DNA of 64,000 nucleotides from Cycas panzhihuaensis (GCA_023213395.1 CM041465.1:225625741-225689740), one strand, 5' to 3'; shown: positions 31,251 to 37,719, counted from the stretch's first letter. Program-made: numbers and translations. The notes: generated by a model from the letters alone, not told the origin.

Positions 31251-32472
31251 TAATTGGAACCTATTTAACATATGGGAGACTCTAATAGACTAGTTTTGAA
31301 AGGTATAACTACAACGAGGAAACCAAACTATGAGGCCTATTTCTTTTTACAATTTTACAATCAAAGTAAAGCCATTTATTTTGAGCCATATCCTTAACAT
31401 GTGATTCCTATATCTTCCCCTTATTCATTAGTTTATCTCTAAGCCTTTGTATTTTACACTTATAACATTGAACATCTATACTAATGATAGGAGCTAAGGG
31501 AATCTGGGGGTATCTTCCACTGCATGGATTATTTGTGATCAAATGGACAATGTTCTAACTAGTGTTGGGGTCTTTCTCTCTCAAGCAACCAATAATATAG
31601 TTGATTACATAATTCTCATTAGAGCCCTTAGTCATTCTCTCCATTTTCACAAGGGGTTAATTCACTTACTTTTTGACTTATAGATTATCATCTATTATCT
31701 TACTCACATTTATGAAACTTATTTAGATCACTTATGCACCCTTCTAGCTATTGCCACTTCTTTTATAACTTAATTTTCTTATGTTATTATTTAATATATC
31801 CCACATAGTTAAAATATTAAAGCTGACTCGCTTATATCCCATATCTTTCTATAGGAAATGAAGTGGAGCTAAACTAAGCTCTGATACCAAATGAAGGAAA
31901 TAATATTTGCATGGGAAAATAATGTTCACTTAACTCAAATGAAACTAAATCAACTTAACATAAATCAAAGTTAAACTTACCTTAACATGTTGAGCATCAC
32001 ATGTCTAAATTGAGGTTGATGAGGTGTACAATCCTAGTTAGAAAGGTGATAGTGGAGTGATGACAATTAACTCCAACATTCTCCCCCTTAATGTCATCAC
32101 GACCACTTATATCTTTTCCTTGAACTTATGAAACTTGTACTTGAAAAAAACTTTAAAATTCTGATCTTGATTAACACACTTTAACTTTCTTGTAAAATAT
32201 ATCTTTTTGCCAAGAAATAATGAAAAGAAACTGTAAATAGATGATGCTTGATTCAAGTATGTATGTATAGATGCAACTTTGACCTTGTCAACTAGAACAT
32301 TGAGAAAATTTTAAATTTGAGCTTTATCTTTTGTAATCTTTATGCTCTGAACAACTGTCATATCATCAGGTTCATTCTTTGTCAGATTAAATTCATTCTT
32401 TATCATATTATAGGATTCATTTTCATTCTCGCCCTCAAATGGAGGATCAAATCCTTGTGTAGCAAGTTGGTC

Positions 32473-32832
32473 CTACATTTGGTATGAATCTTCATGGGTG
32501 TTGTCGTTATGCTTCACCTGTTCTATCACCTGTCTCACATGTTCATAAAAAATATCATCAAATACATGGAGGGTATCTCCCCCATAAGTAGAAATCAATA
32601 CATTCCAAATTGATTTAGAAGTTGTTAGTTCAGAAACCTTTGAAAAAACGTCATCATTCATAGTGCAAAATAATAATCCTAATGCTTCATTATGCTTTCT
32701 AATGTTGTCCTTAATACTAACATCATAGTTATGTTGTAAATACTTCCATAGATCATATGCAATAAAATAAGTTTTCATAATCTTATGTCATTCTAAAAAA
32801 TTTTATCCATCAAATATAGGTAATTGTGCCAT
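32473..32832 (-). pseudogene. Short copia-type gag (N-terminal part), with premature stops
   Basis: MAQLPIFDG*NF...MKTYFIAYDLWKY...VFSKVSELTTSKSIWNVLISTYGG. Confidence 0.88.
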
Positions 32833-34605
32833 GTTATAAAAAACTTTAATATAAAAGTATACTTTTAGTAAATCAAAATAGTCAATAAACTACTGAATAT
32901 ATATGATTTCAGATATATTTTTCAAAAGAAATGTAATGCACCAAGGAACATATATGATTTCAGATAAACCTTTTGATTTTTCAAATGAATAAATGTAAAC
33001 TTTTAATCAATAAACCCTTAACCTTAATAATAATGTATAATGCTGAAAAACTAAAATATATGGATTTATATTTTTAATTGCTTTATGAACAATTACTATT
33101 ACTAAACAACTTAAAATGCTTATATGAAGGTCAAGTAGAAACCTTAAACATCTATCATGAACAACTAATGAAAAATAAAATAGAATTTTCTTAAAAAGTT
33201 TGAAGGGCAAGTCTATTAGGATGTACTTATATGCTCAACTTTGATAGCTTGAAAACTATACTAAACAATGTTAGAATAACTTGAAATTGTACCAATATGT
33301 AGATTAATAAGGTGTAAATCCAATGGAACTAACCATTTTGAAAACGGGTTCTAATAAATCAAGATTTGATGAATCAAAAGAACATGCCTCATTTTGAGGC
33401 ACAACATGAGTAAGGGGCTCAAAATTGCATAAAATTGCTAATAAAAACTTTAGAAAGTATTGAAAAATAATCAAATATATTTGTAAAACTACTAAATAGA
33501 TGTTTAGTTGAAAATTTTTGAAACAATTTATATGAAAATATGCGAAAAATGACAGATTGAGGCTAGTAAGTAGTCCAACTTTAATAGATTTGAAAATAAG
33601 TAAAAACACCTTAAAATAGATGAAAAACTATGTCAATTCGAAGGGGAATGAGTCAGCTTCCTAATAAAGCTAACGGAATTTAATTTGGATGTTAAGCAGA
33701 AAAGGTACAGTAAAAACAGTAACAAGGACCTTTATGTAAAAATGTTAAAAAAATGCTAGAAAGCACTAAAATATCAATTTCAACGATTAAAATAATAGTC
33801 AAAATAAATTATAAAAAATAAAATAAAATATAGGTTTTAAAGTTTGTTGAACTATATTAATGTAGAACAAATTTAAGCAGAAAATAGTTTCCAGGTAAGA
33901 AAATATAGTCAGTTCAAAAAATGATTTTGTAAAAAGTTGAAAAAAAACTGAAAAAAATAGATGATCGACTTTAAATCGAATGAAACAGGGTCAAATCTAT
34001 ACCAAATTGGTCATATGATTAGTCAAAATTGATCTAAAGAAAATTTTTGATCTAATGGAAGTGGTTTCGTCTGAAACTAATGCTCCAACGAAGAGTTTTG
34101 GTAAAACAACTCTAATAACCCTATAAAAAATGAAACATTAAAAAAAATAAAAATAAAAAACGTTTATAAAAAAATGAAAATCCCCTTTAAGGATGACTAA
34201 TGGTCACGTGAGGATTGAATATAACCAAGGGGATAAGATTTAAGGATGCTAAGCTCTTTAAACTCCCGGATTTAAAATTATATAAAAAATAATTTAATTT
34301 TTTAAAAAACTTTATAAAACTAAAAAATAAAAAAATACAAAGAAGATGAGAAGTTCTAGAAGACGGCTGCACCCACCGACGCACGCTATCCCGAGTTGCA
34401 TAAAAGGCAATTTTTAATAATATAATAAAGGAAGGATGTTGTTATTAATAAAGGCCTCACCACTACTTTTGCGTACTCTCGGATTCCCAATGTTGAGCGC
34501 CACCGCTTCTATAGGTGAACAAATAATACAACACAACAGAACATAATAGATCAAAACAGAAATCTCTAGGTACAGATATCGATACACAGATGATCGAATG
34601 TAGGG

Positions 34606-34852
34606 GTACTTCTATGGTGAGAGCGCAGCCAGACTGCGTGTGCGGGAAGGAAGAGACATCAGATACCACTTACAAATCCAGCTCCAAAAATCTGCTCAAT
34701 GTCTCATCTTTATAGATCTCTCCTCAATGCACGGTACATGGAACGACGAGCAAAGAGGCACACCAGAATTACTAGTAAAAATTGGCAAGAATGATACTTT
34801 CAAGCTGGGTGCTTCATCTAGGCTCTACAAACTGCAATGGCTTCCAATCCCA
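34606..34852 (+). pseudogene. PS1: Captured FHA-domain fragment resembling plant PARALLEL SPINDLE 1
   Basis: QPDC.../RYHLQIQ...IDLSSMHGTW...DTFKLGASSRLYKLQWLP matches the remembered PS1 FHA pattern HPDC..SRFHL..DLSSVHGTW..DT..IGGS.R.Y.L.W.P; FHA identity is firmer than orthology. Confidence 0.75.
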
Positions 34853-35478: not shown

Positions 35479-35703
35479 GAAGTGAATTGCTCTGACTATC
35501 ATTTTGTATATATGGGCCCTAAAGGTGCTTAGACTCCATTGCATGTAGATGTGTTCAGGTCATATAGTTGGTCAGCAAATATTTGTGAGAAGAAAGTCTG
35601 GCATCTTTTGCCACCTTTACAATCGCATCTTTTATATGACAAGTATTTGAAGTACACTGTCAATGATATTTATGGGGATGTTTCAGTAAAGGAATTTCTT
35701 GGA
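35479..35703 (+). pseudogene. JMJ20: Captured JmjC-domain fragment, JMJD4/JMJ20 family
   Basis: NCSDYHFVYMGPKGA*TPLHVDVFRSYSWSANICEKKVW matches the JMJD4 signature DYRFVYMG.KG.WTP.HADVFRS.SWSAN.CG.K.W, including the HxD iron ligands; TGG>TAG stop. Confidence 0.92.
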
Positions 35704-35928
35704 AGTCTTCAATATCATGAAAAAGAGTGATATAAACTTGCTCTTTCTTCCTACAATACTATTATGGGAGCTTTGGTAAAAAAAAGAGAGCTTGACATGG
35801 CTGAAAATCTGTTCATAGAGATGCTTGTTAATGGGGTTTCTGCCAATACTCTAACTTATACTAACATGGTTCACTGCATGTGCCTGAAGGGCAAGGTGGA
35901 TGCTGCTCTGTGCTTTCTAGATGAAATA
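35702..35928 (+). pseudogene. Captured P-type PPR fragment (~2 motifs)
   Basis: EVFNIMKKS/..LSSYNTIMGALVKKRELDMAENLFIEMLVNGVSANTLTYTNMVHCMCLKGKVDAALCFLDEI shows 35-aa PPR periodicity. Confidence 0.92.
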
Positions 35929-37719
35929 ATAAAAAAGGAGAAGTTAGAAGTTCTATTTTTTTCAAGGGTACTTGCCCCTATTTATTTTTTTTGTGTTTTT
36001 TTTTTTAACTTTTGAATCTTTCAAAGAAAACTTACTTAATAATATGAGTTTTCAACTGAATATATATATATATATATATATATGTTTAAATTTTAAAAAA
36101 AATGAAGAACCAAATATTTCAAGGTCATGCAAATAATCAAAAATTTTCAAATATACTCGAGCAAGATATATCAAAAAATATGTGTTTAAAACTGAAAAAT
36201 AACTAAAGAACCTGGAACACACAACTGTAGTTGGCTTTATAGCTGAAAATAAGCTTCAAAAGCTTCCAGTAGATAAATCTTCTTCCTCACAGGTCGAATA
36301 TAAGTAGATCTACTGTAACAGATGGTTTAAAGGGCAGGATATGTAGCCAAAAGCTATAGATCTATATAGAAAACTTTAAAATATAGTTAAAAAATATAAT
36401 GAAAAATATAGATCTGAAATGAAATACAATAGATCTGAACTAAATATAGCAGAAAATGCTAAAAAAACTTGATAAAATAAGTAGATCTTAAGCTGAATAA
36501 TGCAGATCTGATGTGAGTATAGCAGATCTATAGCCAAATATTGTAGATCTATACAAATACACCAAAAAAAATGGTCAAATAACTACTAAAACATATAGAT
36601 CTGAAATGAAATATAATAAATATGAAGTAAAAATTGTAGATCTTTGAAGAAAACTTGATACCTTTTGTATGCAGCTAATGCTCTTTTGTAAATCTATGAA
36701 AAATATCAGATAAGTAGACAAAAAAAATTTGTAAACTGTCAAAATTATGATAAAACTATAGATCTGAAGAGAAAATAACTCAAATATAAGAAAAAACTTG
36801 AATATATATAACTTATTGCTGAAATAATGATGAAATATAAGATAAAATGTGTAAAACTGAAGAAATGTGGCTCAAATCTGTGAAAAAACTTGAGCAAATA
36901 TGGCTTATTACTAAAATCCTACGTAGATCTGCACAAATCTGGAAATAAACCTGAAAAATATTTGTTAAACCAGAAATATAGCTCAATAATAATCAAAATC
37001 TGCTGAAATAATATATAAAACTCACTAAAAATTTTTAAAAAAACAAATATAGCTAATATGTCTTGCTTGTAAGAAAATCTGCCATAGAATGCCAGTAGAT
37101 CCTGTTGCTCTTCTTTAAAAAAACTTCACTAATAGAGATGCAATAGCCCAAAATCTCACTTTTTCAAAAAACTTCATAGATCAGTAATTGCCTGCTCTGA
37201 TACCAAATATAGGAAATGAAGTGGAGCTAAACTAAGCTTTGATACCAAATGAAGGAAATAATGTTTGTAGGAGAACAAAGTAGAACGTATATCAAATAAC
37301 CATAAACCAATATTGCATCAATGTATCACAATCACAATAGAATAAACCATGAAAGCATTGTTGTTCAATCCATTATAGTAAAAATGAGCATTACATATTT
37401 CTCAAAAGAGGGCAATGTCTAGAGACACTAGGGTTTCACACCTCTTAATATTTATAATTTGGGGGAGGAGGGAAACTTCTCAACCCCTGAATTTAAAATA
37501 ATAATAAAATAATGTTCACTTAACTCAAATGAAACTAAATCAACTTAACATAAATCAAAGTTAAACTTACCTTGACATGTTGAGCATCACATATCTAAAT
37601 TGAGGTTGATGAGGTGTACAATCCTGGTTGGAAAGGTGAGAGTGGAGTGATGACAATTAACTCCAACACTTTCATCACCATTACTCTTAATCTTGTCACT
37701 TCAAGATGGGGATGCCTTT

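What the first reader, a model, noticed from the sequence alone, without database searches (positions are those of the whole stretch)
31850..37668. Gag-only LTR element carrying a chimeric FHA + JmjC + PPR host-gene cassette ('Pack-TR-GAG')
Seen: a fully bounded element (two LTRs, PBS, PPT, CTTTC TSD) with only a short gag. Between its 5' LTR and gag lies a ~1.6 kb block with co-oriented, intronless pieces of three unrelated genes. Known: multi-gene capture is typical of Pack-MULEs and Helitrons, and TR-GAG elements are usually described as gag-only. Inference: this family may shuffle exons through RT template switching among co-packaged mRNAs and then spread the chimera.
Basis: partly seen in the sequence, partly recalled or inferred. 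Interest (0 to 1): 0.92.

Follow-up and report, generated by a model that had tools for sequence, protein, structure and literature searches.

The report
Dead LTR element carrying antisense gene scraps
A decayed, non-autonomous copia-type retrotransposon in a gymnosperm-like plant genome carries a 1.6-kb patchwork of intron-free host gene pieces in reverse orientation; this kind of gene-fragment capture is already known and common.

Summary
The structure is real. Window 31850-37668 is a complete LTR element on the minus strand: two LTRs, an exact tRNA-iMet primer binding site, a polypurine tract and a CTTTC target duplication. Its only element-coded ORF is a 101-aa stub of copia gag.

Bases 34359-35945 hold plus-strand pieces of three host genes:
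- A PS1-type FHA gene (tblastn E 6e-33 to a Ginkgo protein).
- A probable JmjC gene (below Pfam's threshold).
- A PPR gene (Pfam 1.8e-12).

The FHA piece runs unbroken across two inferred conserved intron sites, so it was copied from spliced RNA.

- The cargo is antisense to the element, which simple minus-strand template switching does not predict.
- The block is flanked by an exact 10-nt duplication (null frequency 0.004).
- The element is not a TR-GAG (5.8 kb, truncated gag).
- CpG content suggests the pieces differ in age.

Multi-gene capture by LTR elements is already documented (Bs1, LTR-mediated retroposition, a 2026 gymnosperm survey). First readers noted similar antisense cargo elsewhere in this genome (unchecked). 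One follow-up on another window judged such a capture ordinary. Interest is modest.

The parts
31845..31849 (.). Target-site duplication CTTTC, left copy
   Evidence: Read directly. It is identical to 37669-37673.
31850..32078 (-). 3' LTR (229 bp) with a 232-bp internal deletion relative to the 5' LTR. Termini are TG...TA.
   Evidence: 96.5% identity to the 5' LTR over the shared 229 bp.
32079..32089 (-). Polypurine tract AAGGGGGAGAA, directly upstream of the 3' LTR
   Evidence: Read directly. The related element E2 has the same motif at 49158-49168.
32476..32778 (-). Stub gag ORF of 101 aa. Only the first ~70 aa are copia gag.
   Evidence: Pfam Retrotran_gag_2 1.4e-10, profile positions 1-78 of 172. 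It is 38% identical to the E2 stub, with the same truncation point.
32779..34348 (.). AT-rich non-coding spacer. Its right ~850 bp retain CpG.
   Evidence: No Pfam or Rfam hits.
33500..34750 (.). CpG-retaining zone with o/e about 1.0, the highest in the window (median 0.12). It straddles the left cargo boundary.
34349..34358 (.). Left copy of the exact 10-nt direct repeat AGAAGTTCTA that flanks the cargo
   Evidence: The null frequency of such a bracket at this spacing is 0.0037.
34359..35945 (+). Cargo block: a mosaic of host gene pieces, sense on the plus strand and so antisense to the element. GC is 40%, against 25% in the flanks.
34436..35293 (+). Processed piece of a PS1-type FHA gene. 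Secure homology covers 34661-34984. Frame continuity extends it to 35293. The N-terminal 75 codons from an in-frame ATG are decayed and frameshifted.
   Evidence: The ATG-to-homology distance is 75 codons, against 74 in the Ginkgo protein.
35294..35532 (.). Unassigned cargo segment. A minus-strand ORF (35368-35559) looks ARM/U-box-like, but this is unconfirmed.
   Evidence: Atlas 0.90 with 164 shared features, a lead only. Nothing in Pfam, PDB or the protein search.
35533..35727 (+). Probable JmjC (cupin hydroxylase) gene piece of 65 codons without a stop
   Evidence: Pfam JmjC E 0.0036, below the cut-off. Atlas 0.92 with 177 shared features.
35731..35945 (+). PPR gene piece with two P-type repeats, in the same frame as the JmjC piece after one TGA
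   Evidence: Pfam PPR_2 1.8e-12 and PPR 3e-9.
35946..35955 (.). Right copy of the 10-nt direct repeat
35956..37193 (-). AT-rich leader with a degenerate tandem array: 12 AGATCT-bearing units between 36300 and 36930
37194..37205 (-). Primer binding site TGGTATCAGAGC (tRNA-iMet type)
37208..37668 (-). 5' LTR (461 bp). It contains a second, internal PBS-like motif at 37236-37247.
37669..37673 (.). Target-site duplication CTTTC, right copy
   Evidence: Read directly.

Best explanation
This is an old, dead, non-autonomous Ty1/copia-derived LTR retrotransposon. It has a stub gag and no pol, and it depended on proteins of autonomous relatives. Its long non-coding region between the PBS and gag holds a 1.59-kb mosaic of reverse-transcribed host mRNA pieces: the 5' part of a PS1-type FHA mRNA, a JmjC piece and a PPR piece.

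Shown:
- The element's anatomy.
- The identity of the FHA and PPR pieces.
- The antisense orientation of the cargo.
- The unbroken run of the FHA piece across inferred intron sites.
- The 10-nt flanking duplication.

Inferred:
- A reverse transcriptase that jumped between RNA templates made the mosaic, which entered the element's dispensable leader as a block.
- My preferred sub-mechanism (about 0.4 of the total) is capture inside the virus-like particle during plus-strand DNA synthesis. In that model the growing plus strand leaves the minus-strand DNA, copies co-packaged mRNAs from 3' to 5', runs off the 5' end of the FHA mRNA, and returns 10 nt upstream of where it left. This gives antisense cargo, and the cargo would then travel with the element.
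- The pieces probably arrived at different times, because CpG o/e is 0.61 in the FHA part and 0.07 in the JmjC plus PPR parts.
- The cargo encodes nothing now. At most it yields antisense RNA or siRNA against the donor genes.
For: - Anatomy: LTRs, PBS, PPT and TSD; gag stub.
- FHA homology: tblastn E 5.9e-33, one HSP over 34661-34984 aligned to Ginkgo residues 75-189.
- Intron sites: nine independent ORFs called on short genomic contigs (Logan and ENA) lose homology within a few codons upstream of the VHGTW motif, and several end in Q-V as expected at a CAG|GT donor. These mark introns that the cargo lacks.
- Coding frame: 2 stops in 230 codons, against a shuffle mean of 16.
- PPR: 1.8e-12. 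JmjC.
- Orientation: all three pieces are on the plus strand, while gag, PBS and PPT are on the minus strand.
- 10-nt bracket: null frequency 0.0037.
- Family architecture: the related element E2 shares only the LTR, the PPT region and the gag stub, so the PBS-to-gag interval varies within the family.
- CpG contrast.
- Literature: RT template-switch chimeras of several genes inside LTR elements (PMC5131818) and widespread TE capture in gymnosperms (PMC13477047).
Against: - Only one copy could be examined, so it is unknown whether the cargo was present before the last transposition.
- The cargo starts 1.25 kb from the PBS, not at it.
- A flanking duplication is not the signature reported for LTR-mediated retroposition, where cargo replaces internal sequence (PMC5131818).
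- There is no evident microhomology at the return junction.
- The CpG-retaining zone extends about 850 bp into the spacer outside the bracketed block, which a one-step RNA capture does not explain.
- The intron positions are inferred from ORF calls on other species' contigs, not from the donor gene itself.
- The JmjC identity is below curated thresholds.
Confidence: 0.7

Rival explanations
1. A separate retro-mosaic was made by a LINE-type reverse transcriptase through target-primed reverse transcription with template jumps. It was inserted into the element's internal region, before or after the element's own integration, and left a 10-bp target-site duplication.
For: - An exact 10-nt duplication brackets the block.
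- The pieces are co-oriented, and the leftmost one reaches what looks like an mRNA 5' end.
- Multi-template chimeras from LINE reverse transcription are documented (PMC2104539).
- This mechanism is neutral about orientation relative to the host element.
- AGAAG is shared between the end of the PPR piece and the duplicated target, which could have primed internally.
Against: - There is no poly(A) or A-rich tail at the 3' (PPR) end.
- The nick-site context does not resemble a TTTT/AA-type target.
- No LINE was identified in the window.
Confidence: 0.3
2. The cargo is filler DNA. A double-strand break in the integrated element was repaired by end joining that captured cDNA or RNA-templated pieces from several transcripts.
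For: - The block is a patchwork of unrelated processed pieces, with an unassigned segment that may be inverted.
- Capture of reverse-transcribed spliced mRNA at breaks is documented in mouse zygotes (PMC4516963).
- The pieces differ in CpG decay.
Against: - End joining does not normally produce a clean 10-nt flanking duplication.
- 1.6 kb is long for plant filler DNA (my own knowledge).
- Three pieces in one orientation is not expected from random ligation. The chance is about 1 in 4.
Confidence: 0.12
3. The left part is a DNA-level capture, or an in-situ functional transcription unit. In this reading, 33500-35300 is a promoter plus 5' end of an intron-poor PS1-like retrogene copy that has stayed unmethylated, and the JmjC and PPR pieces are older residents.
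For: - CpG o/e is about 1.0 over 33500-34750, centred on the putative 5' end of the FHA piece. This is the highest in the 64-kb window.
- CACGTG and TATA-like motifs lie upstream.
- The JmjC and PPR parts have 1 CpG against 13.5 expected.
Against: - The 10-nt bracket places the block boundary at 34359, not at 33500.
- The FHA frame carries 2 stops and at least one frameshift, so it is not a working gene.
- TATA-like strings are everywhere in this AT-rich DNA.
Confidence: 0.1
4. The mosaic is a retrocopy of a spliced chimeric transcript from a Helitron or Pack-type DNA transposon that had already assembled exons of several genes.
For: - The pieces are co-oriented with abrupt junctions.
- JmjC and PPR are in the same frame.
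- Helitron and Pack elements are the usual multi-gene collectors (PMC2773423).
Against: - There are no TIRs.
- There are no Helitron-type ends at the block boundaries (read).
- No such element is seen in the window.
- This adds a step without adding explanatory power.
Confidence: 0.05

Closest known systems
Maize Bs1 and LTR-mediated retroposition chimeras (Elrouby and Bureau 2001, 2010; Tan et al. 2016, PMC5131818)
   Same: A pol-less LTR element with processed, partial copies of several unlinked host genes in its internal region. RT template switching is the accepted origin, and such chimeras can behave as non-autonomous elements.
   Different: - Here the cargo is antisense to the element, so it cannot be fused to gag or read from the LTR promoter as a sense chimeric gene.
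- The block is bracketed by a 10-nt duplication instead of replacing internal sequence.
- Secondary retroposition was not shown.
TE-captured gene fragments in gymnosperm giga-genomes (PMC13477047)
   Same: A gymnosperm-like genome with a Ty1/copia-type host element that carries exon pieces. The survey reports that about 14% of host TEs carry two or more fragments.
   Different: That survey is statistical and reports no orientation, position or intron status. This report gives one dissected locus.
TR-GAG elements (Chaparro et al. 2015, PMC4350172)
   Same: LTRs, a tRNA-Met PBS, a PPT, a 5-bp TSD, similarity to gag only and no pol.
   Different: - The element is 5.8 kb, against under 4 kb for TR-GAG.
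- Its gag is a 101-aa N-terminal stub lying next to the PPT, not a complete capsid ORF with a zinc knuckle.
- In size and coding content it is closer to a LARD that kept a gag remnant.
LINE-made chimeric retropseudogenes (for example the tripartite chimera of Magnaporthe, PMC2104539)
   Same: Several RNA-derived pieces are fused head to tail in one orientation and flanked by a short target duplication.
   Different: There is no poly(A) tail, and the block sits inside an LTR element.

Membership tests
LTR retrotransposon, Ty1/copia-derived | Two direct LTRs flanked by a 5-bp target-site duplication | tested here: met
   LTRs at 37208-37668 and 31850-32078 are 96.5% identical over the shared 229 bp. 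CTTTC lies on both sides.
LTR retrotransposon, Ty1/copia-derived | A PBS complementary to the tRNA-iMet 3' end next to the 5' LTR, and a PPT next to the 3' LTR | tested here: met
   Exact 12-nt PBS at 37194-37205. PPT at 32079-32089.
LTR retrotransposon, Ty1/copia-derived | Canonical TG...CA LTR termini | tested here: not met
   The termini are TG...TA. An internal CA followed by TT and a PBS-like motif suggests the LTR was extended by 42 nt.
LTR retrotransposon, Ty1/copia-derived | Copia-type gag homology | tested here: met
   Pfam Retrotran_gag_2 1.4e-10.
TR-GAG | Total length under 4 kb | tested here: not met
   The element is 5819 bp, or 4.2 kb without the cargo block. The definition is in PMC4350172.
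TR-GAG | A single ORF that codes for a complete GAG (capsid domain, usually a zinc knuckle) | tested here: not met
   The ORF is 101 aa and covers profile positions 1-78 of 172. It has no zinc-knuckle hit.
TR-GAG | No protease, integrase, RT or RNase H | tested here: met
   No such ORFs or Pfam hits lie inside 31850-37668.
TR-GAG | At least two copies in the genome | tested here: inconclusive
   There is one diverged, truncated relative in the window (E2, 48484-49480). The genome itself could not be searched.
LTR-mediated retroposition chimera (Bs1 type) | Processed (intron-free) host mRNA copy inside the element | tested here: met
   The FHA piece is continuous across two intron sites inferred from nine exon ORFs of other plants. 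JmjC was not testable, and PPR is uninformative.
LTR-mediated retroposition chimera (Bs1 type) | Cargo in the sense of the element, transcribed from the LTR | tested here: not met
   All identified pieces are on the plus strand and the element is on the minus strand. The sense rule is stated in PMC7264820.
LTR-mediated retroposition chimera (Bs1 type) | Microsimilarity at switch points, with cargo replacing internal sequence | tested here: inconclusive
What is seen instead is a 10-nt flanking duplication.
LTR-mediated retroposition chimera (Bs1 type) | Secondary retroposition of the chimera (several copies with the same cargo) | not testable with these tools
No plant genome search was available.
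Pack-MULE | Long terminal inverted repeats around the cargo, with a 9-11-bp TSD | tested here: not met
   No inverted repeats lie at the block ends. Only the 10-nt duplication fits.
Helitron | 5' TC and 3' CTRR ends with a 3' hairpin, inserted between A and T, with no TSD | tested here: not met
   The block starts GAAGAC and ends AAGTT, and it has a flanking duplication.
LINE-mediated processed or chimeric retrocopy | Intron-free copy with a 3' poly(A) tail and a variable-length TSD | tested here: inconclusive
   It is intron-free and has a TSD-like 10-nt repeat, but no poly(A) at either end.

The most novel reading that the evidence does not exclude
This locus is one instance of a genome-wide, polarised capture process. 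In it, copia-type elements of this gymnosperm pick up host mRNA pieces preferentially in antisense and in the PBS-to-gag leader. The cause would be aberrant plus-strand transfer or synthesis inside the virus-like particle. The resulting non-autonomous families would act as vehicles that spread antisense copies of host genes. The CpG-retaining island at the cargo's 5' end would mark an internally active, unmethylated promoter.
Probability: 0.15. Interest if true: 0.7.

Novelty: new member of a known kind. Interest (0 to 1): 0.33.

Why it matters
As a single locus it adds little. Capture of processed gene fragments by LTR retrotransposons, including multi-gene chimeras, is established in maize, rice, sorghum, animals and gymnosperms.

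It is still a clean, fully bounded example, and three details are worth a genome-wide test:
- The orientation is antisense, whereas reviews say transduced genes are usually sense.
- A 10-nt duplication brackets the block.
- A CpG island-like zone sits in an otherwise CpG-exhausted genome.

If antisense cargo in the leader proves to be a statistical rule in this genome, two things follow. It would point to a capture step during plus-strand synthesis that has not been described. It would also point to a systematic source of antisense RNA and siRNA against host genes.

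Tried and rejected
- The search for homologous proteins found nothing for the gag stub, the JmjC piece or the minus-strand ARM-like ORF. The length window of that tool makes these blanks uninformative.
- PDB searches gave only a weak FHA hit (NIPP1, E 0.011) and nothing for JmjC or ARM.
- The ARM/U-box reading of 35368-35559 (-) rests on one Atlas score of 0.90 and my own reading of the motif. I treat it as unconfirmed.
- The third in-frame FHA ORF (35093-35293) and the N-terminal 75 codons show no significant similarity to the Ginkgo or Cryptomeria proteins. 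I assign them to the FHA gene only by frame continuity and spacing.
- Rfam and ORF/Pfam scans of the spacer and leader found nothing.
- Pfam on ORFs of the neighbouring element's leader and of other CpG-richer zones found no cargo.
- No 5' LTR of the related element E2 is in the window.
- The search of earlier findings by sequence was blank, which means nothing.
- Pack-MULE and Helitron readings were rejected for lack of their terminal structures.
Pieces separated by stops were searched apart.

Full report
**1. What is there**

Direct reading, repeat finding and self-BLAST show one complete LTR element at 31850-37668. Its sense strand is the window's minus strand.

- The 5' LTR is 37208-37668 (461 bp).
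- The 3' LTR is 31850-32078 (229 bp). It lacks 232 bp that the 5' LTR has. A related LTR elsewhere in the window (49252-49368) aligns across the deletion point, so the long form is ancestral.
- Over the shared 229 bp the LTRs differ at 8 sites, 7 of them transitions (96.5% identity, K2P 0.036). With rates commonly used for gymnosperms (my own knowledge, 0.7-2.2e-9 per site per year) that is roughly 8-25 million years. The estimate is rough.
- An exact 12-nt tRNA-iMet-type PBS lies two bases inside the 5' LTR, at 37194-37205. The window holds 8 hits at up to 1 mismatch, against 0.13 expected by chance.
- A purine tract abuts the 3' LTR at 32079-32089.
- CTTTC flanks both ends, at 31845-31849 and 37669-37673.
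- The LTR ends in TG...TA. It contains an older CA + TT + PBS-like motif 42 nt inside its 3' end. This agrees with another first-reader note (s1-817377).

**2. The gag**

The only element-type coding sequence is ORF 32476-32778 (-), 101 aa. It matches Pfam Retrotran_gag_2 at 1.4e-10, but only profile positions 1-78 of 172. It has no zinc knuckle.

It lies about 390 bp from the PPT and 4.4 kb from the PBS. A second, 5'-truncated relative on the plus strand (E2) has a gag stub at 48514-48789, a PPT at 49158-49168 and an LTR from 49169. Its stub ends at the same point, after YGGD (38% amino-acid identity; dN/dS about 0.4 with saturated dS).

E1 and E2 share only the LTR, the PPT region and the stub. 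The stub is therefore a family trait, and the PBS-to-gag interval varies within the family.

The TR-GAG definition (PMC4350172) requires a length under 4 kb and a complete GAG ORF. Neither is met. The element is better described as a LARD-like copia derivative with a gag remnant.

**3. The cargo**

Bases 34359-35945 stand out by GC content: 40%, against about 25% on both sides. All identified pieces are on the plus strand.

- **FHA piece.**
  - The 98-aa ORF piece found 107 relatives at E up to 0.001 among 1.84 billion representatives. The best are a 727-aa Ginkgo protein (Gb_11552) and a Cryptomeria protein.
  - BLASTP gives 63% identity over 79 aa.
  - The next in-frame ORF continues the match to Ginkgo residues 165-189 (0 of 300 shuffles reach the score).
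  - tblastn gives one HSP over 34661-34984 aligned to residues 75-189, E 5.9e-33.
  - The Ginkgo protein has an N-terminal FHA domain. By my reading of its sequence, which I did not test, it also has a C-terminal PIN-like region of the PS1 (PARALLEL SPINDLE 1) type.
  - The frame over 34604-35293 has 2 stops in 230 codons, against 9-15 in the other five frames and 16 on average in shuffles (0 of 2000 at 2 or fewer). The decayed coding sequence therefore runs to about 35293.
  - An in-frame ATG at 34436 lies 75 codons before the first strongly matching codon, against 74 in Ginkgo. A weak shifted-frame match to the conserved GRHPDC motif is also present.
  - The piece therefore probably starts with about 77 nt of 5' UTR and the start codon. 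This is not statistically supported.
- **JmjC piece (35533-35727).** Pfam E is 0.0036, below the gathering score. The Atlas score is 0.92 with 177 shared features, all in JmjC/Cupin_8 clusters. I rate it probable.
- **PPR piece (35731-35945).** There are two P-type repeats, PPR_2 1.8e-12. It is in the same frame as JmjC after one TGA.
- **Unassigned segment (35294-35532).** A minus-strand ORF reads like an ARM repeat of a U-box protein. Only a 0.90 Atlas score supports this, and Pfam, PDB and the protein search do not.

**4. Intron test**

The representative search, however, returned many short proteins called as plain ORFs on 1-3-kb genomic contigs from Logan, ENA and JGI.

- Nine of them (P0003, P0096, P0098, P0099, P0100, P0102, P0104, P0106, P0107) lose all similarity within a few codons upstream of the conserved VHGTW.
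- Several of these, and P0079, end in Q-V followed by junk, which is what a CAG|GT splice donor gives.
- P0003 is of the Ginkgo/Cryptomeria sequence type.
- These ORFs therefore mark an exon bounded by two conserved introns.
- The cargo is continuous and homologous for 26 codons upstream of that exon start, and it continues into the next exon (the ICGFEDENKV region) with only an 8-residue length difference.

So at least this piece was copied from spliced RNA. This is an inference from other species' contigs, not from the donor gene. PPR genes are usually intron-free (my own knowledge), so that piece is uninformative. JmjC could not be tested.

**5.

- **Orientation.** The cargo is antisense to gag, PBS and PPT. 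Switching from element RNA to a co-packaged mRNA during minus-strand synthesis would put the mRNA in the element's sense. A review states that transduced sequences in LTR elements are usually in the gag-pol sense (PMC7264820).
- **Flanking duplication.** An exact 10-nt direct repeat (34349-34358 and 35946-35955) brackets the GC-rich block. Sliding the same spacing along the window, an exact 10-mer within 15 nt of both boundaries occurs at 0.37% of positions. This looks like insertion into a previously continuous sequence. It differs from the replacement signature described for LTR-mediated retroposition (PMC5131818). There are no TIRs, no Helitron ends and no poly(A).
- **CpG.** The window is extremely CpG-poor (o/e 0.19, median 0.12 in 1-kb windows), and the LTRs have 0-1 CpG.
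  - The FHA part has 24 CpGs (o/e 0.61). The JmjC plus PPR parts have 1 against 13.5 expected.
  - The 1-kb windows starting at 33501 and 33751 (33501-34750) have o/e about 1.0, the highest in the window. That zone reaches about 850 bp into the AT-rich spacer outside the bracket.
  - I take this to mean that the pieces differ in age, or that the zone has stayed unmethylated in the germ line. It remains unexplained.

**6. Mechanism**

Shown: a bounded non-autonomous element, processed FHA cargo, antisense orientation and a bracket duplication.

Inferred: a reverse transcriptase jumping between RNA templates built the mosaic, which entered the element's dispensable leader. Three routes fit.

- **(a) Capture in the particle during plus-strand synthesis.** I prefer this route, but only weakly.
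  - The plus strand leaves the minus-strand DNA and copies mRNAs from 3' to 5'.
  - It runs off the FHA mRNA 5' end and returns 10 nt upstream.
  - This explains the antisense orientation, the order of the pieces and the apparent mRNA 5' end at the gag-proximal boundary.
- **(b) A LINE-type target-primed insertion with template jumps.** This explains the duplication, but the poly(A) tail is missing.
- **(c) Break repair with cDNA filler.**

A single copy cannot decide among them, nor whether the cargo predates the last transposition.

**7. Context and novelty**

- The best FHA relatives are gymnosperm proteins.
- The window's 29.0% GC and its CpG exhaustion match published Welwitschia values: 29.07% GC, long-term deamination and over 10,000 non-autonomous LTR copies (PMC8275611). 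The species is not proven.
- Multi-gene capture by LTR elements is known from several sources:
  - Bs1 (reviewed in PMC13317346).
  - 20 LTR elements with gene fragments in 22 Mb of maize (PMC2773423).
  - Multi-gene LTR chimeras in animals (PMC5131818).
  - About 400,000 captured fragments per gymnosperm genome, with about 14% of host TEs holding two or more (PMC13477047).
- Within this scan, many first-reader notes on other windows of the same genome describe antisense cargo between PBS and gag in copia-type elements. These are unchecked. One follow-up (s1-822580) judged a spliced ArfGAP capture ordinary.
- I therefore file this locus as a new member of a known kind. The possible antisense and leader bias is the only part that could be new, and it needs genome-wide statistics.

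**8. Limits**

- All three word-indexed protein searches and the single representative search are spent.
ORF pieces separated by stops were searched apart.

Noticed in passing
window 27874-31248 (-): A second small copia-type LTR element lies 600 bp to the left. Its LTRs are 27874-28093 and 31029-31248 (87.7% identity), with an exact tRNA-iMet PBS at 31017-31028 and gag-like ORFs at 28704-29267 (-). Pfam found no host-gene cargo in its 1.75-kb leader.
   Followed up: partly
window 48484-49480 (+): E2 is a 5'-truncated relative of the studied element. Its gag stub is cut at the same point, its PPT is at 49158-49168, and its LTR starts at 49169. No 5' LTR is in the window. dN/dS between the two stubs is about 0.4, with saturated dS.
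   Followed up: partly
window 49492-49843 (+): A TRIM-like pair of about 145-bp direct repeats (49492-49636 and 49699-49843, 79-80% identity) has a PBS-like TGATATCAGAGC between them at 49641-49652. It sits in or just after E2's LTR.
   Followed up: no
window 37236-37247 and 31878-31889 (-): Both LTRs contain an internal PBS-like motif preceded by CA + TT, 42 nt before the LTR's TA end. The LTR seems to have been extended over an old PBS. This matches note s1-817377.
   Followed up: partly
window 33500-34750: This CpG island-like zone (o/e about 1.0) lies in a window whose median is 0.12. It straddles the spacer-cargo boundary. It could be an unmethylated internal promoter or a very recent arrival.
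   Followed up: partly
window 36300-36930: The leader holds a degenerate tandem array. Twelve AGATCT-bearing units alternate between spacings of about 52 and 21 bp.
   Followed up: no
window 16958, 18215, 19267 (+): Three more exact tRNA-iMet PBS motifs lie within 2.3 kb. They suggest a cluster of small LTR or TRIM elements.
   Followed up: no
window 4900-6700 and 22700-26300: Kilobase-scale (AT)n-rich microsatellite zones produce long spurious ORFs on both strands.
   Followed up: no
window 61669-63998 (-): Ty3/gypsy-type pol ORFs (RT and integrase motifs, by my reading) run off the right end of the window.
   Followed up: no
whole window: GC is 29.0% and CpG o/e is 0.19. The closest relatives of the FHA piece are Ginkgo and Cryptomeria proteins. 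The composition fits published Welwitschia figures, but the species is not proven.
   Followed up: partly
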